A stretch of 63,224 bases of DNA, the filler included, from Octopus bimaculoides (lineage: Eukaryota), in assembly GCF_001194135.2 (NCBI RefSeq). It is 8 parts of 7 records of this genome, joined end to end, with 100 filler letters (N's around TTAATTAATTAA, not from the genome) between each part and the next. Parts side by side here need not be neighbours in the genome. Positions count along the whole stretch, not along the records: positions 28,649 to 46,124 come from NC_069001.1; 7 more parts are not named here. One strand, written 5' to 3'. Below are positions 28,539-46,124 of the stretch, piece by piece (the stretch's first letter is position 1; each line of letters begins with the position of its first letter). The notes beneath the pieces are model-generated. The model worked only from the letters and a program-made list of their open reading frames with translations, ran no database searches and was not told the origin of the DNA. Position numbers and translations under genes: made by a program.

Positions 28539-28949
28539 TATATATATANNNNNNNNNNNNNNNNNNNNNNNNNNNNNNNNNNNNNNNNNNNNTTAATTAA
28601 TTAANNNNNNNNNNNNNNNNNNNNNNNNNNNNNNNNNNNNNNNNNNNNGTGTTCATTAATATTTCTCTTACATTTTTGTTTGGCAATTGTTTCGCTTTGT
28701 TTAATATAATTTCTCTGGGGTGCACATCATGAAAAAGAAGCTATTGTTGCTTTAAAGCTAGACGGTAAAATAACATGGAAATGTTTCTAAAAAAAGAAAA
28801 ATAAATATACACGACATTGGTATCTAACCTCAGAATACTGTTGACATTCCAAAATATTCAATAATAATTCCCGCTTGAAATAAAAGGAAATACTATGCAA
28901 AATGAAAATTAATTTCCTCAGTTAAACTTATAAAGCAACTCCTTTCTAC

Positions 28950-29143
28950 TATAGGCACAAGGCCTAAAATTTTGGGGAGGGTGATAGTCGATTACATCGA
29001 CCCAGTACTCAACTGGTACTTAATTTATCGACCCCTAAAGGATAAAAGGCAAAGTCGACCTCGGCGGAATTTGAACTCAGAAAGTAATGGCAGACGAAAT
29101 TCCGCCAAGCATTTCGCCTGGCGTGCTAACGATTCTGCCAGCT
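28950..29143 (-). mobile_element. SINE family B
   Basis: Reverse complement of the family B core. Confidence 0.85.
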
Positions 29144-29246
29144 CCAAACCACGAGTCTGAACGCGTAGAAGCGAACGATGACGACGATGATGATAGTAGT
29201 TATATGTTTGTACTTTAGGCAAATGGCCAACAAATTTGAGGGGTGG

Positions 29247-30078
29247 GGTTTTGATATCTGGTGGACTTAAATATCCTTGTTGAAAACGTCCTGCTACATT
29301 ACGCCGAAACTTCATGTCCATTGCGTGACACGAACGAGACAACTAGCGACGTCACCTCTTTGTACATGAGGGTGAACCTAATGTGTCTTCCTCCCAAATA
29401 TTATGGAACACAAAAATAAATGGCAGAAAATGAAAGGCACATTGACATTTCAATATCTATAAAAACAAAAAATAATATTACAGTAAACACGTTCAACGAG
29501 GACAACAGCAGCAACAGTATATAGCCACAACATTGGCATATATATATATGCCAGACGAAAATTACGAACAATAACTAAAAGCAATCGTTTGCTAACGTAT
29601 TTTTGAATAAAATGAGTCTTTAAATATGGAACACTGCTGAAAAAGAAACATAAGTTTGGCAGCATTCTTATTCACAAAACAAGCGACAGCCTATCTCCAT
29701 CACAGAGGCACTGATAAAGCGGAGGATAACTTTTCTGTCCTTTTCGAAGGTCACTCGAGTTTCTCTAGTTCAATCCAATAAAGCGCTGGCGCCAGTTTTG
29801 GCAAATACGTCAAATGAAAACGTTATCGGGAGATGGAGGCCGTATGATTACCTGTGAATTATTTTTAAAACAGGGAACTGGCTAAATTGCCTGAAACATG
29901 CATGCTTGTAAACAGTTCCATAATATTTGGGAGGAAGACACATTAGGTTCACCCTCATGTACAAAGAGGTGACGTCGCTAGTTGTCCCGTTTGTGTCACG
30001 CAATGGACATGAAGTTTCGGCGTAATGTAGCAGGACGCTTTCAACAAGGATATTTAAGTCCACCAGATATCAAAAACC
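29247..30078. mobile_element. Fold-back element with about 163-bp near-identical inverted arms
   Basis: 29247-29409 is the reverse complement of 29915-30078 with only a few differences. No TSD recognised. Confidence 0.7.
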
Positions 30079-30939
30079 ATAAAACAATGCATCAATTGAC
30101 CTGATTAGAAGATATTAAGAGGAAGGCCTTAAACCCAGCTTTAAAGACATAACTCCTAGCTGCTACACATATGATAGCAAAAGTCTCTATATAATGAAGT
30201 GTTTGATACACGTGTAATGCAATGTTATGAAGACCTGTAAGTTTATGCATTAAAATATAAATAAGAACATATAAAATGTGGAACTTCTAATAAGGGTCTT
30301 CGTAATTGCTATTATTTCCAATGTTATATGATTAACATTGACCTTCGTCACCATCAAAATAGCATACTTTCTTTATATATCCTAAATATATACGGCAGAG
30401 AAGTTCGTTATAAAATGGAAATTGCATAGCTGTCAATAAATTCCTTTCAGCTGTCACTTAGCTCCAGGTCAACCTTCACTGGTTAGAATTATCGTTACAA
30501 ATGTTTCAGTCTTGACCAATCCATAGTTTTTCCTTTTTTTTATATATATATATATATATATACATATGACTACATTACACAACTTGATCTTGTCTTAAGT
30601 GCGATCCAAAGGAGAGCTGGCTTCTATTTATAGCAAGTTAGGCGACAACATAGCTGCTTCTTTGCCGACTCCAATAAAACCTGTACCTGTCACACATACA
30701 TCTCCGTTCAAACCCCGTCTCCAATATTCTTCGGTAACAGAATCTCGTAATAATCTCAGGATTATCACTCTTAGAATCTAAGAAATTTTAATTTTGCTTC
30801 ACTTAAAAAGAAATGCAGAAATGCAATCACATATCTTCAACTAAAAACAAAACAAGAGACTATCATACATGTCAACCCTTAGCATTATTATCGACCCCAT
30901 CTTCAAAATCGTCTTGGCTTTCGTAATAGTTTCAAATTT

Positions 30940-31131
30940 TGGCGTAGGAACAGCAGTTTTGAGGGAAGAGGGGAAAGTCCATTACATCGGCTCCGGTGCT
31001 TAACTGGAACTTATTTTCTCAATCTCGAAAGGATGGAAGGCAAATTCGAACTCCGCAGGATTTAAACACAAAGACGGGTGAAATACTGTTAGGCATTATT
31101 GTCCGGCGTCCTAAAGGTTCTGCCAGTTCTC
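30940..31131 (-). mobile_element. Old, diverged SINE family B copy that retains CpGs
   Basis: Family B layout is recognisable despite divergence. Confidence 0.6.
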
Positions 31132-31429
31132 AGGTTTTCCTTTTGTTCATCATAATGATGTTCTTAATCACAGTCGTAATTACTAACGCAAACATCATCT
31201 CCATTATCATCCTTACAATCATCAACAATGTGAGCAACACCATCATGACTTCCACCATTAGATTTTATCGTCCTTGTCATCATTTACATAATTTATGTAG
31301 CGTCTTCACCATCATCATCATCAATACTTACGTCGTATTTGTTTTTGCTGTGTCTTAAATGGAAAGAAACTAATAAACAACCAACCAACCTAATAAAATG
31401 ACAAAAATATTGAAAAGAATTAAACAATA

Positions 31430-31770
31430 GGCGCAGGAGTAGCTGTGTGGTAAGTATCTTGCTTACCAACCACATCGTTCCGGGTTCAGTCCCACTGCGT
31501 GGTACTGAGGCAAGTGTCTTCTACTATAGCCTCAGGCCGACCAAAGCCTTGAGTGGATTTGGTTGACGGAAACTGAAAGAAGCCCGTCGTATATATGTAT
31601 ATATGCATATATGTATGTGTGTAAATATGTTTGTGTGTCTGTGTTTGTCTCCCACCAACATCGCTTGATTACCAATGCTGGTGTGTTTACGCATTTGTTC
31701 GACTAAATGCGGTGCTCCAGCATGGCTGCAGTCAAATGACTGAAACAAGTAAAAGAGTAAAGAGTAAGAG
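31430..31770 (+). mobile_element. SINE family A with internal deletion
   Basis: Lacks the GACCGATAGAATAAGTAC segment present in other copies. Confidence 0.88.
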
Positions 31771-32378
31771 TAATAAAAAAACGTTGGTTAACGAGAAAAT
31801 ATGAACATTAAATGAAACGACAGATAAATAATTTTCAGACAAACGCAGGAATAATAATTATAATGTATTTATAATTATATCATTAACAGCCACATATTAC
31901 CAAAAACAATTGTTTGTTTTGTTGTATTTCATTCTTTGTTTTTTTTTTAATGTTTTTGTTTTTAGTCTTATGTTGAAATTCCAAACTGCTTGAGTTTTGG
32001 GATCTAATTTTGAAAATATTATATACAGAAAAGAAAAAAANNNNNNNNNNNNNNNNNNNNNNNNNNNNNNNNNNNNNNNNNNNNNNNNNNNNNNNNNNNN
32101 NNNNNNNNNNNNNNNNNNNNNNNNNNNNNNNNNNNNNNNNNNNNNNNNNNNNNNNNNNNNNNNNNNNNNNNNNNNNNNNNNNNNNNNNNNNNNNNNNNNN
32201 NNNNNNNNNNNNNNNNNNNNNNNNNNNNNNNNNNNNNNNNNNNNNNNNNNNNNNNNNNNNNNNNNNNNNNNNNNNNNNNNNNNNNNNNNNNNNNNNNNNN
32301 NNNNNNNNNNNNNGTCATATTGTTCACGTTTTAAAAAACAAATATTACCGATTTTCATATATAAATACGCATTTTCTT

Positions 32379-32411
<33 letters not shown>

Positions 32412-34625
32412 AGAGAGAGAGAGTATTGTGTGTACAGTTAGATTTACGACTACTGCTAGTAAGTTTAGAGCATCTGATCTATGGAAACATAATGCCACAA
32501 AGCATTCCAGTGATGACTGCATTTCGAACACCGACTGTAGAGAATGCAGATAAACCAAAATAGTGAAACGTACGTAGGGAACAGATGATATAAAATGCGC
32601 CTTCTTTTTATCTTACTTTTTTAAATATATATATCTAGAGACACACACACACACTATATATATAGAGAGAGAGAGAGACAGCTGATGAAGGGATATTCCA
32701 AGTGGCTTTCCGTTTTCCTATGTGTTCGTTCCGTTGTCTGTAGTTTATTGTTCTAACGTCCTGTACCCTGATATGCATATATATACACATGTAGATGTAA
32801 GTATGTACATATATGTGTGTATACATGTATATATATTCTTTGTATTATTACATTATTGAACGCACACGTCCTTTTTTGCAAGTAAGTCTACTATTATTCT
32901 GACGTGACTATCTTTCTATCTATCTATCTATCTGTCTATCTGTCTATCTATCTATCTATCTTTCTATCTATTTATCTATCTGTCTTCCTCTATCTTCCTA
33001 TCTACCCCTCTGTCCTGGCCTCTACTTCNNNNNNNNNNNNNNNNNNNNNNNNNNNNNNNNNNNNNNNNNNNNNNNNNNNNNNNNNNNNNNNNNNNNNNNN
33101 NNNNNNNNNNNNNNNNNNNNNNNNNNNNNNNNNNNNNNNNNNNNNNNNNNNNNNNNNNNNNNNNNNNNNNNNNNNNNNNNNNNNNNNNNNNNNNNNNNNN
33201 NNNNNNNNNNNNNNNNNNNNNNNNNNNNNNNNNNNNNNNNNNNNNNNNNNNNNNNNNNNNNNNNNNNNNNNNNNNNNNNNNNNNNNNNNNNNNNNNNNNN
33301 NNNNNNNNNNNNNNNNNNNNNNNNNNNNNNNNNNNNNNNNNNNNNNNNNNNNNNNNNNNNNNNNNNNNNNNNNNNNNNNNNNNNNNNNNNNNNNNNNNNN
33401 NNNNNNNNNNNNNNNNNNNNNNNNNNNNNNNNNNNNNNNNNNNNNNNNNNNNNNNNNNNNNNNNNNNNNNNNNNNNNNNNNNNNNNNNNNNNNNNNNNNN
33501 NNNNNNNNNNNNNNNNNNNNNNNNNNNNNNNNNNNNNNNNNNNNNNNNNNNNNNATATATATATATATATATATATAAGCTAGTCAATCAGTAAGTCCTT
33601 CTTGGAGATAGTAAGATAAGAATTGAAGCAAATTTAGCTGTTATTTCTATGAAATTGAAAGGGCTACAAAGACTCTCTTGGTTACAAACCCCGGCACAAA
33701 GTTATGTATTCGAAAGCAGATTATAAAATTTAAATAATCGATAAGGATGATTCACAGTTTATGTATTATTAAGGAAATTTATGACTAAACACTACCGGGA
33801 TGGCATCCTAGTCATTCCCCTTTCACTATATTTGTTCCCTCAGTGGGAGTTGCGGTTGGCACAGTCTAGTGTTAATAAAGATGTAAATCGTCGTGTTTTT
33901 TGTGGTGACGCTAACTGAATGCACATCTGACCGAATAATTAAATAGTTAGTTTCCCCCATCATGAGATTGTGATTTTTACCGTAATCTCGTGTCAACTCA
34001 AGACTGCGCTTGAGACTGAAGTGGAAGCCTGGTCAGATGGATTCTATTTAAATCAATGGACAGATATTGTCACATACATACATGTGCATCACATTGGCTC
34101 AGCTTAAGAATTTCGTATCTGCCGAACGCTCAGCCACAATACACAGCTCTTATAACGAGGATGCACTTTGGTTGATCACACAACTAAAACTGAATACTCA
34201 CGGTTTAAACCACCGGAGGTTGACTTGTCACAGCCACATAAATAATGAAATACATCACCTACTGTAGCAGAACAACACTAGTGAAGGCAGACAGTCTGTA
34301 TTGAAACGTATGAATATTTGTATGTATGTATATGGGGACAAATCAATGTAATGTTATCTATTGGTTTGAACGCCCTCTACAAATAATGTTTACTCGGTAT
34401 TCTTATGCTGAGTCTTTTCTTGTGTGAATAGTCTTCTCAAATTTTAGGATAAGATATGCGTATCCTATTACACACACACATATATATATATAGTTTTATA
34501 TATGTTTGACTTAAATTTGACGGTCAAATATAGCTTTATACAGAAATGTTGACATAGGAATAAATTACATTAATAATGGATATTAGCGTCAAATCTCTCT
34601 CTTAAATTAAAAAATTTTAAACTTT

Positions 34626-34663
<38 letters not shown>

Positions 34664-35067
34664 CTACGTTAAATTGCCTTTAATGTGAGCAAACGTGAAA
34701 ACGTTTTAACTAACGGTTTCATAGCTTATATAGCATATATATATATATATATATACATTGGGGTGGGAGGGAAACTGGATTGAGATGGTAATATTTATTT
34801 TCAGCAGCGGTGTTTCGTGTCAGTAGACTTCTGATTGACAGCATAATTCCAATATCACCCAATTAATTGACATTTCTAATTCGATGTATCAATCAAATGG
34901 TGCGGGATTTTCTCAACGTCACTCATTTGCGAGACTAAGATATAAACTTACTAATTATTTATCCTTAGTTCAGCCCTGATTGAGCGGAAGTTGCTCAGAG
35001 GCTCTCCTCCTATGGCAATCTCGTCTATTTCTATGAAAATCTATTTAGTAGGAGTAAGATGTAAATA

Positions 35068-35316
35068 GTGGAGGCGCGTGGCTTAGTGGTTAGGGTGTCA
35101 GCACCATGATCGTAAGATTGTGCTTTCGATTCCTGGACCGGGCGACGCGTTGTGTTCTTGAGCAAAACACTTCATTTTACGTTGCTGCAGTCCACTCAGC
35201 TAGCAAAAATGAGTAACGCTGCGATGGACTGGCGTCCCGTCCAGCTGGGGAACACATACGCCATTGAAACCGGGAAACCAGGCCCATGAGCCTGGCTAGG
35301 CTTTAAAAGGGCGCAA
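35068..35316 (+). mobile_element. tRNA-derived SINE family C with TSD
   Basis: A-box TGGCTTAGTGG, B-box-like TTCGATTCC, GATGTAAATA duplicated on both flanks; near-identical to 47669-47918. Confidence 0.9.
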
Positions 35317-36876
35317 GAAAAGGATGTAAATACATTGTTTTGTTTTTTTAAGAAAGCGGCATATAATTTGGGAGGTTTTGACTGCATTTTCTAAAAGACG
35401 AATCGGTTTTTGCCTCTCCTTATAGCTGAAGGCGGCACCTATCCATAAATTCGTTTCACTACTTAAATGACTTGATTCGCTGAAATATTAAAGTATCTTC
35501 TCTGCTCTAAAGGAGTATCGAACCATCGTATATTCTCCGGTAACTAACTAAAATCATTTGATGGCTCAATTCGACTAAACTCTAGACATCGTATGAGCAA
35601 AGTCAGTCGAATATTTTGTAGCAAAGAGAATTAATCCAGCCACTTGATTTAAATGGGGATCAGTAACTAGATCAGCAAAGATCACTCGAATATTCTACAA
35701 CTTAATAAGCTGATCCAGTCCGTTGCCCAGCTCTAAATAAAAAAACAGACGAAAATTTATCTATTATGATGTATCTTATAATGTGAGCAACAGCATCATG
35801 ACCTCCACCACTACATTTTATCGTCCTTGTCATCATTGACTAGATCTAACTATCAAGATGGACAAGGATTAATTGAATATTGTCTTCAGTCCCTTAATTC
35901 AGCACCATAAACCAAAATGAGCAATGATCTCACTAGATTCTGGTGAGAATTCGTTCTCTGTAGACCTACTCACCTACTGAATAGATTCTCACGTTCGACA
36001 TTTTTGCTATAAACGATATAAACAGTATGACTCTTCCAAAATGCAGCTCTCTATCGGGATTCTATTTTACACTTTTTCTTCGCTTAAATATAATTTCAAA
36101 TATGTAAATGACTGAAAATCTATGAGTAAAGAGACATTTGTATTTTTGATTTGTCTGAGTGCGTGCGTAAAAAAAAAATGCCATCGTTTGTATGTGTGTG
36201 TAATTATATGCGCGTTTGTATATATATATGTAGGTAGGTAGGTTGAATTTTTAGTTTTCGTCTTGTTTGTTTCTTTCTTTTAGATTTCCTTTTCGCTGTT
36301 TATTATTAATCAAGTGTATGACTTGAGTTTTTAATTGTTGTTTTTTCTTCATTTTCGTTTGCCTTTGTTTTATTGTAAGTTTAAGGTTTTTTTTTTTACT
36401 GTTCTTTCTTGAATGAAGCTACGTTTCATTCAGTCGTCGAATCATGGCAATACGTTAACGGGCAACAGTAAAACAAACACACACATACACGCACACAAAA
36501 CATACGGGCACTGCTCACATAGACACGGATTCATGCAAGGTGTTTTGCACTGTGCTCTAACGAATTAACGCCAATTTGTCCTCCATATTTTTTAATCAAC
36601 TTCATCACAATGATAATCATAATCATCAGCATTAATAGTTTTTTTTTGTTTGTTATTTTGTAATATTTTATCTGAATTGTTTTTTGCTTAGTTTTGTGTT
36701 TTCTTCATTATAATTTTTCTTTTGTTTTCATAAATTTTATGAATAATAATAATTATTATCCTCGTGTCCGCTAATCTGTCACCCTTGTGGTAATAAATGA
36801 AATCCTCCCCATAATTATAATAATAATAATTATTATTATTATTAATTAGAATTATCATCAATATTGATAAGTGAAT

Positions 36877-37135
36877 CTAAGAATGTATCCAGCCAACTTT
36901 ATGATTGTTCCTGTTCGGTAACTGTACATGTCCTTTTAAGACTTTCGGATAGTCCTGCTCGCACACCAGGTTACCGTTCACGATGCTGAATCGATCCCCC
37001 GTCACCAGTTGGTTATGACATGTGACGCACGTGAAGCATTTCAAGTGGTAAACGTTCCCTTGTACACGTCTCACCATTTCATTGGCTGGGATGGTCTGTC
37101 CACATGTATAGCACGTACCACCCACTCCGAACAAT
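36877..37135 (-). CDS. LMO4: LIM domain only 4, exon encoding the second LIM domain and C-terminus
   Basis: (R)LFGVGGTCYTCGQTIPANEMVRRVQGNVYHLKCFTCVTCHNQLVTGDRFSIVNGNLVCEQD has a complete LIM C/H spacing and closely resembles LMO4 LIM2 as recalled (LFGNSGACSACGQSIPASELVMRAQGNVYHLKCFTC). Acceptor TTTTCTTTCTTATTGCAG| at 37136, phase 2. The end is either TAG at 36877 or a weak donor at 36897. Confidence 0.93.
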
Positions 37136-37393
37136 CTGCAATAAGAAAGAAAATGACAGAGAATTAGAAGTGAGATTATTCCATTTTCATTTGCTGAAAT
37201 AGTTTTTTTGATATTTCAAGTCCTCTCTTATATTCATACACTGTTATTATTCACTAATTTATGGCTAACTGAAGCACTGGTTTTCCACCGGGGCCCAACA
37301 TGACAATTGAGGGTCCGTGCTTTTTTTAATTTGTGTACACTAAATTGTTTATACTTTTATAATATACCAAATATTTTAATATATTTCTACAAT

Positions 37394-37556
37394 AGACGTA
37401 GGAGCGGCTGTGTGGTAAGTACCTTGCTTACGAAACACATGGTTCCGGGTTCAGTCCCACTGCGTGGCACCTTGGAAAAGTGTTTTCTACTATAGCCTCG
37501 GGCCGACCAAAGCCTTGTGAGTGAATTTGGTAGACGGAAACTGAAAGAAGCCCGTC

Positions 37557-37610
<54 letters not shown>

Positions 37611-37815
37611 GTGTGTTTGTGTGTCTGTTTGTCCTCCCAGCATCGCTTGATATCCGATGCTGGTGTGTATACGTCCCCTTAGCAGTTCGGCAAAAGAGAC
37701 CGATAGAATAAGTACTAGGCTTACAAAGAATAAGTCCTGGGGTCGATTTGCTCGACTAAAGGTGGTGCTCCAGCATGGCCACAGTCAAATGACTGAAACT
37801 AGTAAAAGAGTAAAA
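37394..37815 (+). mobile_element. SINE family A, full length, in the LMO4 intron
   Basis: tRNA-like head, internal (TG)(TA) array and GTAAAAGA tail. Confidence 0.92.
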
Positions 37816-38335
37816 GAATCCCTAATAAAATTTAATTCTAAAAATATAATAGGATTTTTGAAACATTGAATGGCTATGAGGATCCATTCATGTATAATAG
37901 AAATCAAAGAGGTCTTTGAGCAACAAAAAAAACTGTTGGGAATGACTGATTTAAATAAACATAAAATCAACATTGTAGCACGAAACATAGCAATATATTC
38001 TAGCAGATCAATCATCAAAGACGCTCCATTTGTGATTACCACAGGTGAAAGATAAGTGTGGAAATTTGTCGTTGCCCAGTAGCATAATAGGTTTCTACGT
38101 TATTAATATCACAGAAATTTTGACGAAGTTGACTCTTATGAAATCTGAAATCAAAACATAACGTTATGAAACTCAGTACTCTAAGAATTCTGATTTATCT
38201 GCTCTTGTTTACTATATTTCGGATTAAATATTTTCTGGTCGCAATATTCACGTATTTTATTCATACAGTATACAGTATACATTCTCTTCGTGTTTAGCTG
38301 CAGCGATAAGTTATTGTTGGAAGAATATATTGCTA

Positions 38336-41300
38336 TTGGAATGAAATAACGAAAGAATGTAAGTACGTACGTACGTTCAAACGGACGCACGGACGAAGGA
38401 ACGAACGTACGTACTTAAGCACGAACGTAGTACGTACGTACGGAGGAACGAACTAACGAACGAGCGTACGTAAGTACGAATGCAGAAAAGAAAAAACGAA
38501 CGATCCAACGAACGAACGGACGTACGCACGTACGTACAAACGAACCAACGTATATACGTACGTACGTACGATTGAACTACGTAAGTACGAACGACCGAAA
38601 GAACGAACGAACGTATGTACGTACTTACGAATGAACGAACGATCCAACGATCGAACGTACGTACGTAAGAACGGACCAATGAACGAACGATCGAACAAAA
38701 AATAGAGAACGATTGAAGGAAAAAACGAACGAATGTACGTACGTAGGTACGAACGAATGTACGTACGCAGGTACGAACGAACGTACGTAAGTACGTACGC
38801 ACGGACAGACGGACGGACTAAAGAATAAACGAACAAAAGAACGAACGTACGTACGTAAGTACGAACGAACGATCGAACGTAGGAACGAACGTACGTATCT
38901 ACGAACGAATGAAGGAACGAACTAACGTACGTACGTACGTACGTACGAATGCACAAAAAACAAATGAACCATCCAAAGAACGAACGTACATACGTACGCA
39001 TGTACGTACGTACTTACTCATGTACGTACGTACAAACGTACTTACGTTCGTACGAACGAAAGAAAGAAGTACGTACGTACGTACGTACGAATGAACGAAC
39101 GAGCGATCGAACGAACGAACGAACGCAAGAGCGACCGTAAGAACGTACGTTCGTTGGAATGAAATAAATAACGGACGTATGTATATACGTACGTACGAAC
39201 GACCGAACGGACGGACGGACGAAGGAAGGAACGAATTAACGAACGAGCGTATGTACGAACGATCCAACGAACGAACGTACATACGTACGTACGAACGGAC
39301 CAATGAACGAACGATAGACCAAACAAAAGAAAGAACGATTGAAGGAACGAACGTACGTGCGTAAATACGTAGGTACGTACGAACGGACGAAGGAATAAAC
39401 GAATGAAAGCATCTAGGTACCACCGTACGTACGAACGAACGAACGAGAAAATATACGTATGTACCAACGAACGATAGTACGTACCTACGAAGTAGCGAAC
39501 GAACGAAGTAACGAACGAACGAAATGAAGGAGCAAGCGAACGAACGAACGAATGAAGTAACGAACGAACTAACGAATGAATTTACATACGAACGAAATAT
39601 CGTACGTACTTAAGTTCGTATTTACGAACGACCGAACGAACGCAGGTGTGACCGTGGGAACGTACGTTCGTACGAATGAAGTAACGAACGAACGTACGTG
39701 TGAACGAAAGAACGAACGTACGTACTTTAGCACGAACGAACGAACGAACAAACGAACGTAGGAACGTACGTAGGTACCTACGAACGTACAAACGCACGAA
39801 GGAACGAATTAACGAACGAACGTACGTACGTACGCACGTACATAAGTACGTACGTACAAACGAACCAACGTATATACGTACGTATGTAAGTACGAATGAA
39901 CGTACGTACATACGTAAGTCCGAACGAACGTATTTTCGTACGAACAAAACAACGAAAGTACGTATGTACGTACGAATGAACGAACGATCCAACGAACGAA
40001 CGACGAACGCCGAACAAACGAAAGTACGTGCGTACGTACGAACGGACCAATGAACGAACGATTGATTAAGCAAAAGAACGATTGAAGGAACGAACGAATG
40101 TTAGTATGTACGTAAGTACGAACGAACGAACAAAGAAGGAAACGAACGTACATAATTACGTAATTACGTACGTATGAAAGAATGAACGAACGAATGAACG
40201 TACGTACGTACGGACGGACAAAAAATTAACGAACGAAAGCATCTACGTACCTCTGTACGTGCGAACGAACGAACGAGCGGATGTACGTATGTACGAACGA
40301 ACGATAGTACGAACGAACGAAATGAAGGAGCAAGCGAATGAACGAACAAACGTATGTACGAACGAACGAATTAACGAATGAGAATTACGTACGTATGTAC
40401 GTACGAACGAACGAAATATCGTACGTATGTAAACTACGATCGAACGAACGCAAGAGCGACGGGAGGAACGTAACTTCGTAGTAATGAAATAACGAAAGAA
40501 CGTACGTACATACGTACGTAAGAACGACCGTACGGACGAACGAACGTACGTTCGTAAGCAAGAATGAACGTAGGAACGTACGTACGTACCTACGAACGTA
40601 CGTACGTACGAATGCACAAAAGAACAAACGAATGATCCAACGAATGTACGTAAACCAACGTATATACGTACGTACGTATGTACGTACAAATGAACGAACG
40701 AAAGAACGAACGTACTTACCTACGTAAGTACGAAGGAACGATCGAACAAACAAACGTAGGAACATGCGTACGTATCTCCGAACGTACAAACGAATGAAGG
40801 AATGAACGAACGTACGTACGTAAGTACGTACGTATAAACGAACCAGCGTTTATACGTACGTACGTACGTGCGTATATACGTTGGTTCGTTGGATCGTTCG
40901 TACTTACGTATGTACGTACGTTCGTTCTTTCGTTCGTTCATTCGTACGTATGTACGTACGAAAGCACGAACGACGAACGAACAAACGACATACATACGTA
41001 CATTCGCTCGTTCTTTCGTACGTAAGTACGGATGTACGTAGATGCTTTCGTTCGTTTATTCTTTCGTCCATCCGTCCGTCCGTACGTACGTATGTACGCA
41101 CGTGCGTTCGTTCGTTCGATCGTTCGTTCTTTCGTACGTACGTATTTACGTACTTTCGTTTCCTTGTTTGTTCGTTCTTTCGTTCGTACCTACGTACATA
41201 CTTACATTCGTTCGTTCCTTCAATCGTTCTTTCTTTTGTTTGTTCGATCGTTCGTTCATTGGTCCGTTCGTATGTACGTACGGACGTTGGTTCGTTCGTT

Positions 41301-44300
41301 CGTTTGTTCGTTGGATTGATCCTTCATTCGTACGTACGTACGTTCGTTCTTTCGTTCGTACGAAAGTACGTTCGTTGGATTGATCCTTCATTCGTACGTA
41401 CGTTGGATCGTTCGTTTGTTCTTTTGTGCATTCGTTCGTACGTACGTACGTTCGTTCGTACGTACGTTCGTTCGTTCGTAGGTACGTACGTCCGTTCCTA
41501 CATTCGTTCGTTGAATCATTCGTTCGTTCGTTCGTTCGTTCGTTCATTCGTACGTACGTACTATCGTTCGTTCGTACATACGTTCGTTCGCTCGTTTGTT
41601 CTTACGTACGGAGGTACGTAGATGCTTTCGTTCGTTTATGCTTTCGTACGTTCGAACGTACGCTTGTTCGTTCGTTCGTTCGTTCGTTCTTTCGTACGTA
41701 CGTACTTACGTACGTTCGTTTCCTCGTTCGTTCGTTCGTACTTACGTACATACTTACATTCGTTCGTTCCTTCAGTCGTTCTTTCTTTTGTTTAATCGAT
41801 CGTTCATTCATTGGTCCGTTCGTACGTACGTACGTTTGTTCGTTCGTGCTTTCGTTCGTTCGTTGGATCGTTCGTTCATTTGTACTCACGTACCTTCGTT
41901 CGTTCGTTGGATCGTTCGTTTGTTTTTTTGTGCATTCGTACGTACGTACGTACGTTCGTTCGTTAGTTCGTTCCTTCGTTCGTTTGTACGTTCGTAGGTA
42001 CGTACGTACATTGCTGCGTTTGTTCGTGCTTACGTACGTTCATCCGCCCGTTCGGTCATTCGTTCGTACGTACGTATGTACGTACATTCGTTCGTTATTT
42101 CATTCGTACGAACGAACGTTCCTACGGTCGCTCTTGCGTTCGTTCGTTCGTTCGATCGATCGCTCCTTCGTTCGTTCGTACTTACGGAGGTACGTAGATG
42201 CTTTCGTTCGTTTATTATTTCGTCCGTCCGTCCGAACGTACGTTCATACGTATGCACGTACGTTCGTTCGTTCATTCGTTCGATCGTTCGTTCTTTCGTA
42301 CGTACATACGTACGTTCGGTTCCTCGTTTGTTCGTTCGTTCATTTTTCGTTCGTACCTACATACATACTTACATTCGTTCGTTCCTTCAATTGTTCTTTC
42401 TTTTGTTTAATCGATTATTCGTTCATTGATCTGTTCGTACGTACTTTCGTTTGTTCCTCTTTCGTTCGTTTGTTGGATCGTTCGTTCATTCGTACATACG
42501 TACGTACGATCGTTCTTTCGGTGGTACGAAAGTACGTTCGTTCGTTCTTTCGGACTTATGTATATACGTACGTTCATTAAAATACATACGTACGTATGTA
42601 CGTATATACGTTGGTTTGTTTGTACGTACGTACTAACGTACGTGCGTACGAACGTGCGTTCGTTCGTTCGATTGTTCTTTTGTGCATTCGTAGGTACGTA
42701 CGTACGTTCCTACGTTCTTTCGTTCGATCGTTCGTTCGTGCATACGTACGTTCTTTCGTTCTTTCGTTCGTACGTACGTTCGTTTGTTCGTCCGTCCGTC
42801 CGTTCGGTCGTTCGTAAGTTCGCTTGCTCCTTCATTTTGTTCGTTCGTTACTTCGTTCGTTCGTTTGTTATATCATTCGTTCGTACGTACGTACTATCGT
42901 TCATTCGTTACTTCGTTCGTACGTACTATCGTTCTTTCGTACATACGTACATACGTTCATTCGCTCGTTCGTTCGTTCGTACATACCTACGCACGCACGC
43001 ACGTTCGTTCCTTCGTTCGTTCGATCATTCGTCCTTTCGTTCGTACCTACGTACATACTTACATTCGATCCTTCATTGGTCCGATCGTACGTACGTTCGT
43101 TCTTTCGTTCGTTCGTACGTACATACGTACGTACGTACATACGTATATACGTTGGTTCGTTTGTACGTACGTTCGTTCGTCGGATCGTTCGTTTTTTTCC
43201 TTTGTGTATTTGTACGTACGTAATTTCGTACGTTCGTTCGATCGTAAATACGTATATTTCGTTCGTTCGTACGTAGATACGTACGTAAGTTCATTCGTTA
43301 GTTCGTGCACACGTTCGTTCCTTCGAACGTACGTCCGTTCGTACGTACGTTCGTTCGTACGTTCGCTTGCTCCTTCATTTCGGACGTTTGTTTATTCTTC
43401 CGTCCGTCCGTCCGTACCTACGTACGCACGTACGTTCATTCGTCCTTTCCCTCGATCTTTCGTTCTTTCATACGTACGTACTTACGTACGTTAATTTCCT
43501 CGTTTGTTCGTTCGTTTGTTCGTTCGTACCTACGTACATACTTACAATCGGTCGTTCCTTCAATCGTTCTTTCTTTTTTCGTTCGTTCATTGGTCCGTTC
43601 GTACGTACGTTCGTTCGTTCGTGTTCTTTTGTGCATTCGTACGTACGTACGTTCGTTCGTACGTACGTACGTACGTTCCTACGTTCATTCGTGCTTACGT
43701 ACGTACGTTCGTTCTTTCAGTCGGTCGTTCGTACTTACGTATGTACGTACGTTCGTTCATTCGTAAGTACGTATATACGTTGCTTCGTTTGTATGTACGT
43801 CATTACGAACGTGCGTACGTACGTTCGTTCGTTGGATCGTTCGTTTGTTCTTTTGTGCATTCGTACATACGTACTTTCGTTCGTTAGTTCTTTCCTTCGT
43901 TCGTTCGTAGGTACGTACGTAAGTTCCTACGTTCGTTCGTTCGATCGTAATTACGTGCGTACGATATTTCGTCCGTTTGTACGTACGTACGTACGCTCGT
44001 TCGTTAGTTCGTTCCTTCGTACGTTCGTAGCTACGTACGTACGTTCTTTCGTTAGTACGTTCGTTCATTCGTCCGTCCGTCCGGTCGGTCGTTCGAACAT
44101 ACGTATGTACTTTCGTTCGTTCGTTATTTCATTCCAACGAACGTACGTTCCTACGGTCGCTCATGCGTTCGTTCGATCGATCGCTCGTTCGTTCGATCCT
44201 AAATACTTAATTACGTACGTACGATATTTCGTTCGTTCGTACGTACATACGTAAGCACGTAAGTTCAATCGTTAGTTCATTCGTAGGTTCGTTCGTTCGT

Positions 44301-46124
44301 ACGTACGTTCGTTCGTACGTTCTCTTGCTCCATCATTTCATTCGTTCATTCTTACGATATTTCGTTCGTTCGTACATTCGTACATACGTTCATTCGCTCG
44401 TTCGTTCGTTCTTACGTACGGAGGTACGTAGATGCTTTTGTTCGTTTATTCTGTCGTCCATCTGTCCGTCCGTACGTACTACGTACACAAGTCCGTTCGT
44501 TGGATCGTTCTTTCTTTCGTACGTACATACATACTTACACTCGTTCGTTCCTTCAATCGTTCTTTCTTTATATTGTTCTATTGTTCGTTCATTTGTCCGT
44601 TCGTACGTACGTTCGTTCGTTCATTCGTTCGTTCACACTTACGAATGTACGTACGTTCATTCGTTCCTACATACGTACGTACGTATATATGTTGGTTCGT
44701 TTGTACGTACGTTGATACGTACGTACGTACGTTCATTCGTGCTTACATACGTACGTTCGTTCTTTCGTTCGTTCGTTCATCCGTCCGTTCTGTCGTTCGT
44801 ACGTACGTACGTATGTTCGTTCGTTATTTCATTCCTACGAACGAAGGTTCCTACGGTCGCTCTTGCGTTCGTTCGTTCGTTCTTTCATACGTACGTACTT
44901 ATGTACGTTCGTTTCCTTGTTTGTTCGTTCGTTCGTTCGTTCGTACTAACATTCGTTCGTTCCTTCAATCATTCTTTCTTTTGCTTAATTGGTCCGTTTG
45001 TACGTACGCACGTACTTTTTGTTCGGCGTTCGTCGTTTGTTCGTTGGATCGTTCGTTCATTCGTACGTACATACGTACTTTCGTTGTTTTGTTCGTACGA
45101 AAATACGTTGGTTCGTTTGTACGTACGTACTTACGTACATGCGTACGTACGTACGTTCGTTCATTCGTTCGTACGTTCGTTCGGTTGGTCGGTCGTTGGT
45201 ACTTACGTATGAACGTACGTTCGTTCTTTCGTTCATTCGTACGTATATACGTACGTTCGTTTGTACTTANNNNNNNNNNNNNNNNNNNNNNNNNNNNNNN
45301 NNNNNNNNNNNNNNNNNNNNNNNNNNNNNNNNNNNNNNNNNNNNNNNNNNNNNNNNNNNNNNNNNNNNNNNNNNNNNNNNNNNNNNNNNNNNNNNNNNNN
45401 NNNNNNNNNNNNNNNNNNNNNNNNNNNNCGTTCGTTCATTCGTACGTACGTATATACGTTGGTTCGTTTGTACGTACGTACTTACGTACATGCGTACGTA
45501 CGTACGTTCGTTCTTTCGTTGGATCGTTCGTTTGTTCTTTTGTGCATTCGTACGTATATACATTCGTTCCTCGATCGTTCGTACATTCGTAGATACGTAC
45601 GAACGTTCCTACCTTCGTTCGTGCTTACGTACGTACGTTCGTTCATTCGTTCGTACGTTCGTTCGGTTGGTCGGTCGTTGGTACTTACGTATGAACGTAC
45701 GTTCGTTCTTTCGTTCATTCGTACGTATATACGTACGTTCGTTTGTACTTACGTACGTACGTTGGTTCGTTAGTCCGTTCCTTAGTGTGTTCCTACCTTC
45801 GTAGGTACGTACGTACGTTCCTACGTTCGTTCATTCGATCGTTCGTTAGTGCGTTCGTTCTTGCTTACGTACGTTCTTTCTGCAGTCCGTCCGTTCGGTC
45901 GTTCGTACGTACATACGTTCGTTCGTTATTTCATTCATACGAACATACGTTCCTACGTTCGTTCGTACGTACGTACGAACGCACTAACGAATGAAGTTAC
46001 TTACGTACGTATTTACGTAAGAACGAACGAAATATCGTACGTACGTAATTACGTACATTCTTACATTCGTTCGTTCCTTCAATCGTTCTTTCTTTCGTAC
46101 CTACATACATACTTACACTCGTTC
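38336..46124. repeat. Large CpG-rich ACGA/ACGT tetramer satellite with an internal inversion
   Basis: 38336-40863 reads (ACGA/ACGT)n and 40864-46124 reads (TCGT/ACGT)n. Landmark motifs recur and the array runs into a gap. Confidence 0.97.

What the first reader, a model, noticed from the sequence alone, without database searches (positions are those of the whole stretch)
38336..46124. Giant CpG-saturated ACGA/ACGT satellite folded around a spacer-less palindromic axis inside an apparent LMO4 intron
Seen: at least 7.8 kb of 4-nt units almost all containing CG, in an otherwise AT-rich genome. The + strand is A-rich for about 2.5 kb and then T-rich for over 5.2 kb. The switch is at 40863/40864, where about 27 bp on each side are near-perfect mirrors (AACGAACCAGCGTTTATACGTACGTAC|GTACGTGCGTATATACGTTGGTTCGTT). 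Further out the arms are homologous but not identical, which argues against a simple assembler mirror. Inference: transcription through it would give a multi-kb intramolecular dsRNA (ADAR, Dicer or piRNA substrate). As DNA it offers very dense CpG and ACGT-core sites and cruciform potential within a developmental regulator. I do not recognise this satellite, but cannot exclude that it is catalogued.
Basis: partly seen in the sequence, partly recalled or inferred. Interest (0 to 1): 0.8.

Follow-up and report, generated by a model that had tools for sequence, protein, structure and literature searches.

The report
Inverted CpG-rich tetranucleotide satellite beside LMO4 exon
A real tandem-repeat array of at least 7.6 kb, built from about 1,900 degenerate WACG four-base units and containing a head-to-head inversion, lies just upstream of an LMO4 exon; it is an ordinary kind of satellite DNA with no shown function.

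Summary
Positions 38336-46124 are one array of degenerate WACG tetramers (W = A 55%, T 38%). CpG observed/expected is 3.16, against 0.99 in the flank. The array runs to the end of the piece.

The tetramers are nested in larger diverged units of 0.58-1.15 kb. Every unit left of 40863 lies on one strand and every unit to the right on the other.

The axis at 40863/40864 is the best imperfect palindrome in the array (24/27 and 50/60 mirrored bases). Exact mirroring fades within about 75-100 bp. Further out the arms are only head-to-head copies of the same unit order, with block-level indels. The junction is compound, with three strand switches in about 140 bp. A second small inversion lies at 45983-46042.

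A trivial assembler mirror is excluded. A misjoin through the 16-nt (ACGT)4 run is not.

The gap at 45270-45428 is flanked by redundant sequence (126 bp identical), so continuity across it is unproven.

An LMO4 LIM2 exon with a good splice acceptor lies 1.2 kb away on the minus strand in the same contig, so an intronic position is likely but unproven.

Hairpin RNA is strongly predicted in silico, but neither transcription nor any function could be tested.

Verdict: a lineage-specific nested tandem repeat with inversions, like human HSat2/3. Interest is low to moderate.

The parts
38336..40863 (-). Left arm: (WACG)n on the + strand, so A-rich. The larger units (modules A-G) all lie in minus orientation.
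40864..45269 (+). Right arm: (CGTW)n on the + strand, so T-rich. Modules lie in plus orientation, in the order B-D-d-(E)-A-(G)-C-G-F-G. Units are 0.58-1.15 kb.
40837..40890 (.). Spacer-less imperfect palindrome: 27-nt arms with 24/27 mirrored, centred on a 16-nt (ACGT)4 run at 40854-40869. Two copies of module E meet head to head here.
40789..40938 (.). Extended imperfect palindrome, 82.7% self-complementary over 150 bp. In addition, 40897-40960 is a 92% inverted copy of 40671-40734, displaced by about 96 bp.
40956..40990 (-). Small A-rich island of about 35 bp inside the T-rich arm. Together with the axis it makes three strand switches in about 140 bp, that is, a compound junction.
41034..42185 (+). 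Example of two successive 576-bp larger units (module B at 41034, 41610 and 42186). 41106-41356 against 41666-41908 is 86.9% identical.
45144..45269 (+). Last 126 bp before the gap, 100% identical to 45626-45751. This is the longest exact repeat found in the array (31-mer blocks) and it ends exactly at the gap.
45270..45428 (.). Assembly gap of 159 N (length estimated). Continuity across it is not established.
45429..46124 (+). Continuation of the T-rich array to the end of the piece. The array's true end was not seen.
45983..46042 (-). Second small inversion. 45974-46051 is an 88% inverted copy of 44208-44285 (module G). Perfect ACGT-run palindromes centre near its edges, at 45970 and 46048.
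36877..37135 (-). LMO4 second-LIM-domain exon. The acceptor ...ttcttattgcag| lies just upstream of 37135 and the stop codon is at 36877-36879. The array starts 1.2 kb upstream of it in gene sense.

Best explanation
This is a genuine, lineage-specific satellite of the 'nested tandem repeat' kind. Steps 1 and 2 describe what the sequence shows. Step 3 is a mechanistic inference. Step 4 is the default reading in the absence of contrary evidence.

1. A CpG-containing tetranucleotide microsatellite, (AACG)n mixed with the self-complementary (ACGT)n, expanded and then accumulated point mutations while keeping its 4-nt register.
2. Blocks of 0.58-1.15 kb of this degenerate sequence were then re-amplified in tandem, most likely by unequal exchange or replication slippage. 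The resulting copies are now 80-90% alike.
3. At least one fold-back or template-switch rearrangement took place through a self-complementary ACGT run. It placed two sub-arrays head to head at 40863/40864 and left a compound junction. A second small inversion lies at 45983-46042.
4. The array probably lies in the intron upstream of the LMO4 LIM2 exon. It most likely has no selected function and persists as neutral repeat DNA. Its CpGs would survive if little of the germline genome is methylated. The flank CpG o/e of 0.99 argues that this region, at least, is not methylated in the germline.
For: **Unit and register.** The unit is WACG: A 88-89%, C 69-73%, G 83-85%. There is about one indel per 120-160 nt.

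**Period-4 arrays.** TRF reports arrays of 610 and 1049 copies.

**Larger units.** Blocks of 100-450 bp recur at 80-90% identity, at direct offsets of about 560-600, 1156, 2336 and 3333 bp within the right arm. The same blocks occur inverted between the arms. Modules keep one order and one orientation per arm, and both arms read E-first outward from the axis.

**Not a mirror copy.** The two E copies at the axis are different variants. The arms differ by a block of about 440 bp and by 10-30% of bases.

**Uniqueness and contiguity.** Sequence at the axis is unique above 17-19 nt. No N lies between 33555 and 45269.

**Switch points.** Four of the five strand switches sit at locally strong palindromes on ACGT runs. 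The null frequencies are 0.6%, 1.1%, 1.1% and 8.5%.

**Age of the inversion.** Copies within an arm are about as diverged (84-94%) as copies between arms (82-88%), so the inversion is old rather than recent.

**Precedent.** Human HSat2/3 derive from (CATTC)n, form longer nested tandem repeats, and carry many strand switches. The HSat3B5 array on chr9, together with beta satellite arrays, holds over 200 inversion breakpoints (bioRxiv 10.1101/2021.07.12.452052).
Against: - No read-level evidence supports the junction. The piece looks like a draft short-read scaffold with N gaps, in which repeats are error-prone.
- The only long exact repeats abut the gap. This shows that the assembler struggled in this region.
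- The closest pair of copies lies in opposite arms at very different distances from the axis: rc(39920-40170) against 44885-45110, about 90% identical with 71 bp exact. A single ancient fold-back does not predict this.
- A palindrome at a strand switch is partly automatic in a low-complexity repeat, so the ACGT-run mechanism is not independently proven.
- Copy number elsewhere in the genome is unknown. So are the species, transcription and methylation.
Confidence: 0.6

Rival explanations
1. The satellite is real, but the head-to-head junction is an assembly, scaffolding or gap-closing artefact. So, possibly, are the small inversions and the duplicated sequence at the gap. Two sub-arrays, or two orientations of reads from one array, were joined through the self-complementary (ACGT)4 run.
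For: - The junction sits on a 16-nt ACGT run that is its own reverse complement and recurs elsewhere in the array.
- The junction is compound, with three switches in about 140 bp.
- The scaffold has four N gaps. One gap is flanked by 126 bp of identical sequence.
- The best-matching copies lie in opposite arms, including a 71-bp exact inverted match between 39927-39997 and 45039-45109.
Against: - There is no N at the axis.
- The flanks of the axis are not mirror copies (3 mismatches in 27, 10 in 60).
- The shared exact sequence across the junction is only about 17-19 nt, shorter than the k-mers normally used to build contigs (the k-mer remark is general knowledge).
- Strand switches are common in real satellites.
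Confidence: 0.22
2. The inverted array is a functional hairpin-RNA locus. It is transcribed within the LMO4 pre-mRNA and folds into a duplex of more than 2 kb. That duplex is edited by ADAR or diced into small RNAs, and it influences LMO4 splicing or expression, or silences related repeats.
For: - The minus-strand RNA of 800 nt across the axis folds at -369.7 kcal/mol, against -257 +/- 5.6 for shuffles (z = -20).
- Over 2400 nt centred on the axis, MFE is -1287 kcal/mol. Of 936 pairs, 724 join the two arms, and the longest uninterrupted helix is 32 bp. The controls give -732 for one arm alone and -574 for the unique flank.
- The LMO4 exon is on the strand that would read through the array.
Against: - There are no expression, editing or small-RNA data.
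- The upstream exons are not in the piece, so even intronic transcription is an inference.
- The arms show no sign of selection for pairing. Their registration is broken by a 440-bp indel, and mirror identity of about 70% is no better than in shifted registers.
- Any inverted low-complexity repeat would fold like this.
- No Rfam family matches.
Confidence: 0.08
3. The array is one copy of a dispersed element, not a local amplification. It could be the internal tandem-repeat region of a transposon, or a fragment of a high-copy (for example pericentromeric) satellite. In either case its place next to LMO4 is incidental.
For: - The array runs off the end of the piece, so its far boundary and size are unknown.
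- The flank is full of dispersed repeats.
Against: - No terminal repeats, target-site duplication or transposon coding sequence were seen at the visible left edge.
- The left edge of the array aligns with the internal module C. This suggests growth in place from the flank-microsatellite junction.
- No relative was found at module level in any collection I could search.
Confidence: 0.1

Closest known systems
Human satellites 2 and 3 (HSat2/3): nested tandem repeats derived from (CATTC)n
   Same: - A short simple repeat degenerated and was re-amplified as much longer units.
- The arrays contain strand switches (inversion breakpoints): over 200 in the HSat3B5 array on chr9 together with beta satellite arrays.
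- The short-unit register is still visible.
   Different: - The unit here is the tetramer WACG, with a CpG in every unit.
- The size seen is at least 7.6 kb, not megabases.
- The location is apparently inside a gene rather than pericentromeric.
- There is no sequence relationship.
- Genome-wide abundance is unknown.
(AACG)n and (ACGT)n microsatellites
   Same: The same core motifs. Pure (AACG)n tracts are common in eukaryote-like contigs of seawater metagenomes. Their translation 'SFVRSFVR' turns up inside predicted proteins of other animals.
   Different: - The tracts found elsewhere were pure and no longer than 212 bp, with no ACGT admixture. Short-read contigs could not hold more.
- Here only about 66-70% of bases match the period-4 consensus.
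- The array is 30-40 times longer, has a larger-unit structure, and is inverted.
Long inverted repeats and palindromes that extrude cruciforms or stall replication (for example palindromic AT-rich repeats) [from general knowledge]
   Same: A spacer-less centre made of a self-complementary simple repeat. The inversion junction is plausibly made by fold-back or template switching at that centre.
   Different: The perfect palindrome at the axis has arms of only 6 bp (12 bp in all); the longest perfect arm within 20 nt of it is 8 bp. Near-perfect arms reach 27 nt, and identity is about 83% over 75 nt per arm. The multi-kb arms are too diverged (about 70%) to count as a DNA palindrome.
Hairpin-RNA (hpRNA / endo-siRNA) loci and ADAR-edited intronic inverted repeats [from general knowledge]
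   Same: Inverted repeat arms on one transcript strand, with a predicted long imperfect duplex.
   Different: There is no evidence of transcription, dicing or editing. The arms are low-complexity and out of register, rather than a maintained hairpin.

Membership tests
Satellite DNA / nested tandem repeat | Head-to-tail tandem copies of a unit over several kilobases | tested here: met
   TRF period-4 arrays of 610 and 1049 copies. Wrap-around alignment keeps the register.
Satellite DNA / nested tandem repeat | Longer repeat units built from the short repeat, recurring in a fixed order | tested here: met
   Blocks at 80-90% identity with offsets of about 576, 1156, 2336 and 3333 bp. Module order is B-D-d-E-A-G-C-G-F-G. 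Unit length varies, so there is no single clean period.
Satellite DNA / nested tandem repeat | High copy number or several loci in the genome | not testable with these tools
   No genome of the source species is available. No module-level relative was found in the protein or metagenome collections.
Microsatellite (simple sequence repeat) | A pure or nearly pure 1-6-nt repeat, usually shorter than 1 kb | tested here: not met
   Only 66-70% of bases match the period-4 consensus. The length is at least 7.6 kb and there is a larger-unit structure. The array derives from a microsatellite but is no longer one.
Long DNA palindrome / cruciform-forming inverted repeat | No spacer, or a very short one, between the arms | tested here: met
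   The axis lies between 40863 and 40864 and mirroring starts at the first base.
Long DNA palindrome / cruciform-forming inverted repeat | Arms nearly identical along their length and in register | tested here: not met
   24/27, 50/60, 82.7% over 75 nt per arm, then about 70% with a 96-bp and a roughly 440-bp offset.
Assembler fold-back (mirror) artefact | Arms that are exact or near-exact reverse complements of each other from the junction outward | tested here: not met
   There are 3 mismatches within 27 nt and 10 within 60 nt, and the module content differs beyond that. This does not exclude a chimeric join of two different copies.
CpG island (Gardiner-Garden and Frommer criteria, from general knowledge) | G+C of at least 50% together with CpG o/e of at least 0.6 over at least 200 bp | tested here: not met
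   CpG o/e is 3.16 but G+C is only 43.7-44.0%.
Hairpin-RNA / ADAR-substrate locus | The transcript folds into a long duplex | tested here: met
   In silico only. z = -20 for 800 nt. In the 2400-nt fold, 724 of 936 pairs join the arms and the longest helix is 32 bp.
Hairpin-RNA / ADAR-substrate locus | Evidence of transcription and of editing or small RNAs | not testable with these tools
   No expression data are available. Rfam gives no match.
LMO4 intron | LMO4 exons on both sides of the array on one strand | tested here: inconclusive
   The downstream LIM2 exon with its acceptor is present at 36877-37135 on the minus strand. The piece ends inside the array, so no upstream exon can be seen.

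The most novel reading that the evidence does not exclude
The array is transcribed as part of the LMO4 pre-mRNA, in what may be a cephalopod. Its two arms would form a multi-kilobase imperfect RNA hairpin. That hairpin would be a dedicated substrate for ADAR hyper-editing or endo-siRNA/piRNA production, linking satellite structure to the regulation of a neural developmental gene.
Probability: 0.06. Interest if true: 0.55.

Novelty: new member of a known kind. Interest (0 to 1): 0.25.

Why it matters
If the junction is real, it is a compact and fully readable example of three things:
- how a CpG-bearing microsatellite matures into a satellite with larger nested units;
- how a self-complementary motif (ACGT) can seed strand inversions;
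- how such an array can sit, apparently tolerated, inside or beside a developmental regulator gene.

It also carries a practical warning for annotation. The array contains stop-free spurious ORFs of up to 384 codons. Similar 'SFVR' translations already sit inside hypothetical proteins in public databases.

It does not open or settle a long-standing question.

Tried and rejected
- **LMO4 orthologues.** A protein search with the LIM exon returned only four proteins: two gastropod entries (Biomphalaria glabrata, Candidula unifasciata) and two unnamed fragments. None came from a close relative, so the orthologous intron could not be compared. The Biomphalaria LMO4 locus (22 kb) has no WACG array. 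That species is too distant for this to mean much.
- **Satellite relatives.** A protein search with a 384-aa satellite ORF, used as a stand-in for a k-mer search, gave only generic low-complexity hits at 22-62% identity.
- **Species.** A protein search with a peptide translated from the SINE-like flank element found no candidate. A literature string search for that element also found nothing. That the source is an octopus rests only on my memory of this SINE.
- **Metagenomes.** A metagenome scan with a 25-nt module D core gave 0 hits. A generic (WACG)12 scan found only short pure (AACG)n tracts.
- **RNA families.** Rfam and tRNA scans of the whole piece found nothing.
- **Literature.** Searches for an octopus or cephalopod satellite of this kind, or for an AACG/ACGT satellite, found no catalogued match. 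Repbase and Dfam could not be queried, so 'already catalogued' remains open.
- **A clean period.** k-mer offset histograms show several offsets rather than one.
- **Independent homogenisation of the arms.** The six clear D-d copies show only a slight within-arm excess of similarity.
- **CpG island reading.** Rejected on G+C.
- **Coding reading.** Rejected. The long ORFs arise because TTCG and TACG repeats contain no stop codon in any frame.
Full report
**1. What is in the sequence**

The piece runs from 28649 to 46124. From 38336 to its end it is one repeat array. Base composition changes sharply at 38336.
- CpG observed/expected rises from 0.99 in the 9.7-kb flank to 3.14-3.16 in the array, while GpC falls to 0.2-0.3.
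- G+C is about 44% in the array and about 36% in the flank.
- AT skew runs from +0.41 to +0.48 up to about 40650, is zero in the 40649-41148 window, and is -0.42 to -0.56 from there to the end.
- Tandem Repeats Finder reports period-4 arrays of 610 copies (38380-40820, AACG) and 1049 copies (41047-45244, TTCG), plus 45441-46056 after the gap.

**2. The basic unit**

A wrap-around alignment to a cyclic N-A-C-G profile shows that the whole array is (WACG)n.
- The first position is A in 47-57% and T in 36-47% of units.
- The other three positions are A 88-89%, C 69-73% and G 83-85%.
- The 4-nt register is kept with only 21 indels in 2528 nt on the left and 27 in 4406 nt on the right.

That makes about 1,900 units carrying 1,151 CpGs. 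Substitutions are most frequent at the C (C to T 13%, C to A 10%) and at the G (G to A 8-9%). A to G at the fixed A is only 3%. This is a moderate excess of CpG transitions. The counts are not independent events, because blocks were re-amplified.

**3. Larger units**

Strict self-comparison finds blocks of 100-450 bp that recur at 80-90% identity.
- They recur in direct orientation within the right arm, for example 41106-41356 against 41666-41908 at 86.9%, and 41004-41376 against 42160-42542 at 83%. Offsets are about 560-600, 1156, 2336 and 3333 bp.
- They recur in inverted orientation between the arms.

I defined eight short landmark modules (A, B, C, D, d, E, F, G) from recurring non-tetrameric stretches and mapped them.
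- All 19 mapped copies left of 40863 are in minus orientation.
- All mapped copies to the right are in plus orientation, except one copy of G at 46016-46038.
- The recurrent order is B-D-d-(E)-A-(G)-C-G-F-G. It comes in short versions (576 bp; B at 41034, 41610 and 42186) and long versions (about 1.0-1.15 kb).

No copy of any module occurs in the 9.7-kb flank. The structure is what the T2T centromere study calls a nested tandem repeat. In that study HSat2/3 derive from (CATTC)n and form much longer units (bioRxiv 10.1101/2021.07.12.452052).

**4. The axis**

At 40863/40864, 24 of 27 and 50 of 60 bases are mirrored without gaps. No neighbouring centre comes close. It is the best imperfect palindrome in the array. 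The perfect palindrome at the axis has arms of only 6 bp. Perfect arms of 9-11 nt occur at other ACGT runs.

A value of 50/60 or better is reached by only 2.8e-4 of all juxtapositions of a left-arm end with a right-arm start. The local symmetry therefore exceeds what repeat composition gives: two copies of module E meet head to head on a shared 16-nt (ACGT)4 run.

The symmetry fades quickly.
- It is 82.7% over 75 nt per arm.
- 40897-40960 is a 92% inverted copy of 40671-40734, displaced by 96 bp.
- Beyond that, the right arm passes from E almost directly to B, while the left arm reads E-A-C-G-F-G-B. The right arm thus lacks about 440 bp.
- Over kilobases the palindromic registration gives about 70% identity. 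That is no better than registers shifted by hundreds of bases.

The array is therefore not folded in register. It consists of two oppositely oriented sub-arrays of one family.

**5. More than one switch**

A fine-scale strand scan finds A-rich islands inside the T-rich arm at 40956-40990 and at 45983-46042.
- The first island makes the main junction compound, with three switches in about 140 bp.
- The second is an 88% inverted copy of 44208-44285.

Four of the five switch points lie at locally strong palindromes on ACGT runs. The null frequencies are 0.6%, 1.1%, 1.1% and 8.5%. The fifth switch point does not.

ACGT is its own reverse complement, so such runs are natural sites for hairpin formation and template switching. 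That part is inference. It is also partly circular, because any strand switch in a low-complexity repeat looks palindromic.

**6. Age and history**

Clear copies of the D-d block are 86-94% alike within the right arm, 84% alike within the left arm, and 82-88% alike between the arms. The inversion is thus about as old as the amplification of the larger units.

One observation does not fit a single ancient fold-back. The most similar pair of long blocks lies in opposite arms at very different distances from the axis. It is rc(39920-40170) against 44885-45110, about 90% identical, including a 71-bp exact inverted match between 39927-39997 and 45039-45109. This could reflect exchange between the arms, a more complex history, or assembly error.

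**7. The gap**

The same satellite, in the same orientation and with the same composition, lies on both sides of 45270-45428.

The last 126 bp before the gap (45144-45269) are identical to 45626-45751. In addition, 45094-45169 is 96% identical to 45445-45520. The post-gap copy carries an extra stretch of about 131 bp. These are the longest exact repeats in the array, whereas other copies are at most about 90-97% alike.

The simplest readings are two: a very recent duplication of about 0.48 kb, or one locus (or two haplotypes) assembled twice at unmerged contig ends. Continuity is therefore not established, and the array length may be overstated by up to about 0.5 kb. No reading frame is involved.

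**8. Artefact or real**

A mirror artefact, in which the assembler reads back along the same sequence, is excluded because the arms differ from the third helical turn onward.

A chimeric join of two different copies would need a shared exact word. Across the axis only about 17-19 nt are shared with other places. That is shorter than usual contig-building k-mers (general knowledge), but within reach of gap-closing or overlap-merging steps.

The piece has four N runs and the look of a draft short-read scaffold. I put about 0.2 on an artefactual junction. The satellite itself, contiguous with unique sequence from 33555 to 45269, is not in doubt.

**9. Gene context**

On the minus strand, 36877-37135 encodes the second LIM domain of LMO4.
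- The best PDB matches are the LMO4 chains 1rut and 2dfy, at E about 2e-30. Lhx4 follows at 1e-19 and LMO2 at about 4e-18.
- It is 66% identical over its full length to Biomphalaria glabrata LMO4.
- It is preceded by ...tttctttcttattgcag, a textbook acceptor, and ends in a stop codon.

The array begins 1.2 kb upstream in gene sense, in the same gap-free contig. An intron must lie there, so the array is probably intronic. However, the piece ends inside the array and no upstream exon is visible.

The species is unknown. Two copies of a SINE-like element in the flank resemble an octopod SINE as I remember it, but two attempts to verify this found nothing. If the source is an octopus, two published points are relevant. 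Fewer than 10% of CpGs are methylated in O. bimaculoides, and satellites are relatively more methylated than other repeats (PMC9476566).

**10. RNA hairpin potential**

The LMO4-sense RNA of 800 nt across the axis folds at -369.7 kcal/mol, against -257 +/- 5.6 for dinucleotide shuffles (z = -20).

The 2400-nt folds compare as follows:

| Segment | MFE (kcal/mol) | Notes |
|---|---|---|
| Centred on the axis | -1287 | 724 of 936 pairs join the arms; longest uninterrupted helix 32 bp |
| Right arm alone | -732 | - |
| Unique flank | -574 | - |

It remains hypothetical, because transcription, editing and small RNAs cannot be tested here. The arms also show no sign of being kept in register.

**11. 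Comparison and novelty**

The closest known kind is a microsatellite-derived nested tandem repeat with strand switches, as in human HSat2/3.

Pure (AACG)n microsatellites are common elsewhere, but in the sample I could fetch they were no longer than 212 bp and never mixed with ACGT. No relative at module level was found in any searchable collection or in the literature. Repeat catalogues (Repbase, Dfam) could not be queried.

I file this as a new member of a known kind. Interest is low to moderate. The CpG-in-every-unit motif and the ACGT-centred inversions are neat, but nothing here would surprise a satellite-DNA specialist.

Noticed in passing
window 31401-31761 and 37366-37814: Two same-strand copies of a SINE-like dispersed element of about 400 bp (76-95% identical in blocks), each with an internal (TA)n/(TG)n tract. 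From memory it resembles an octopod SINE. A literature string search and a protein search did not confirm this.
   Followed up: partly
window 29246-29409 and 29915-30078: An inverted repeat with 164-nt arms, 98% complementary, separated by 505 nt. It looks like a young foldback or MITE-like element in the flank.
   Followed up: no
window 31227-31287 and 35780-35840: A 61-nt direct repeat at 92% identity, 4.5 kb apart. It is probably part of another dispersed element.
   Followed up: no
window 41426-42580 (+) and other ORFs in 38377-46124: The satellite yields stop-free spurious ORFs of up to 384 aa (FVRS/YVRT repeats). Similar 'SFVRSFVR' stretches occur inside annotated hypothetical proteins in public databases, for example P0005 from Actinostola sp. 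They are probably mis-annotated (AACG)n-type repeats.
   Followed up: partly
window 39927-39997 and 45039-45109: A 71-bp exact inverted match between the two arms, inside blocks that are about 90% identical (rc 39920-40170 against 44885-45110). This is the closest pair of long blocks in the array, yet the two lie at very different distances from the axis. It is unexplained.
   Followed up: partly
window 38300-38360: The left edge of the array aligns with the internal module C (GGAATGAAATAACGAA...). The non-tetrameric core of module C may derive from the original flank-microsatellite junction.
   Followed up: partly
window 32041-32313, 33029-33554; 32908-33004: Two further assembly gaps lie in the flank. 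The second follows a (CTAT)n tract and is followed by TA-rich sequence. This suggests the scaffold breaks at simple repeats generally.
   Followed up: no
L001 (Biomphalaria glabrata JAKZJK010000049.1, LMO4 LIM2 locus): The gastropod LMO4 locus carries several unrelated minisatellites (periods 31, 34, 88 and 127) within 10 kb of the exon, but no WACG array.
   Followed up: partly
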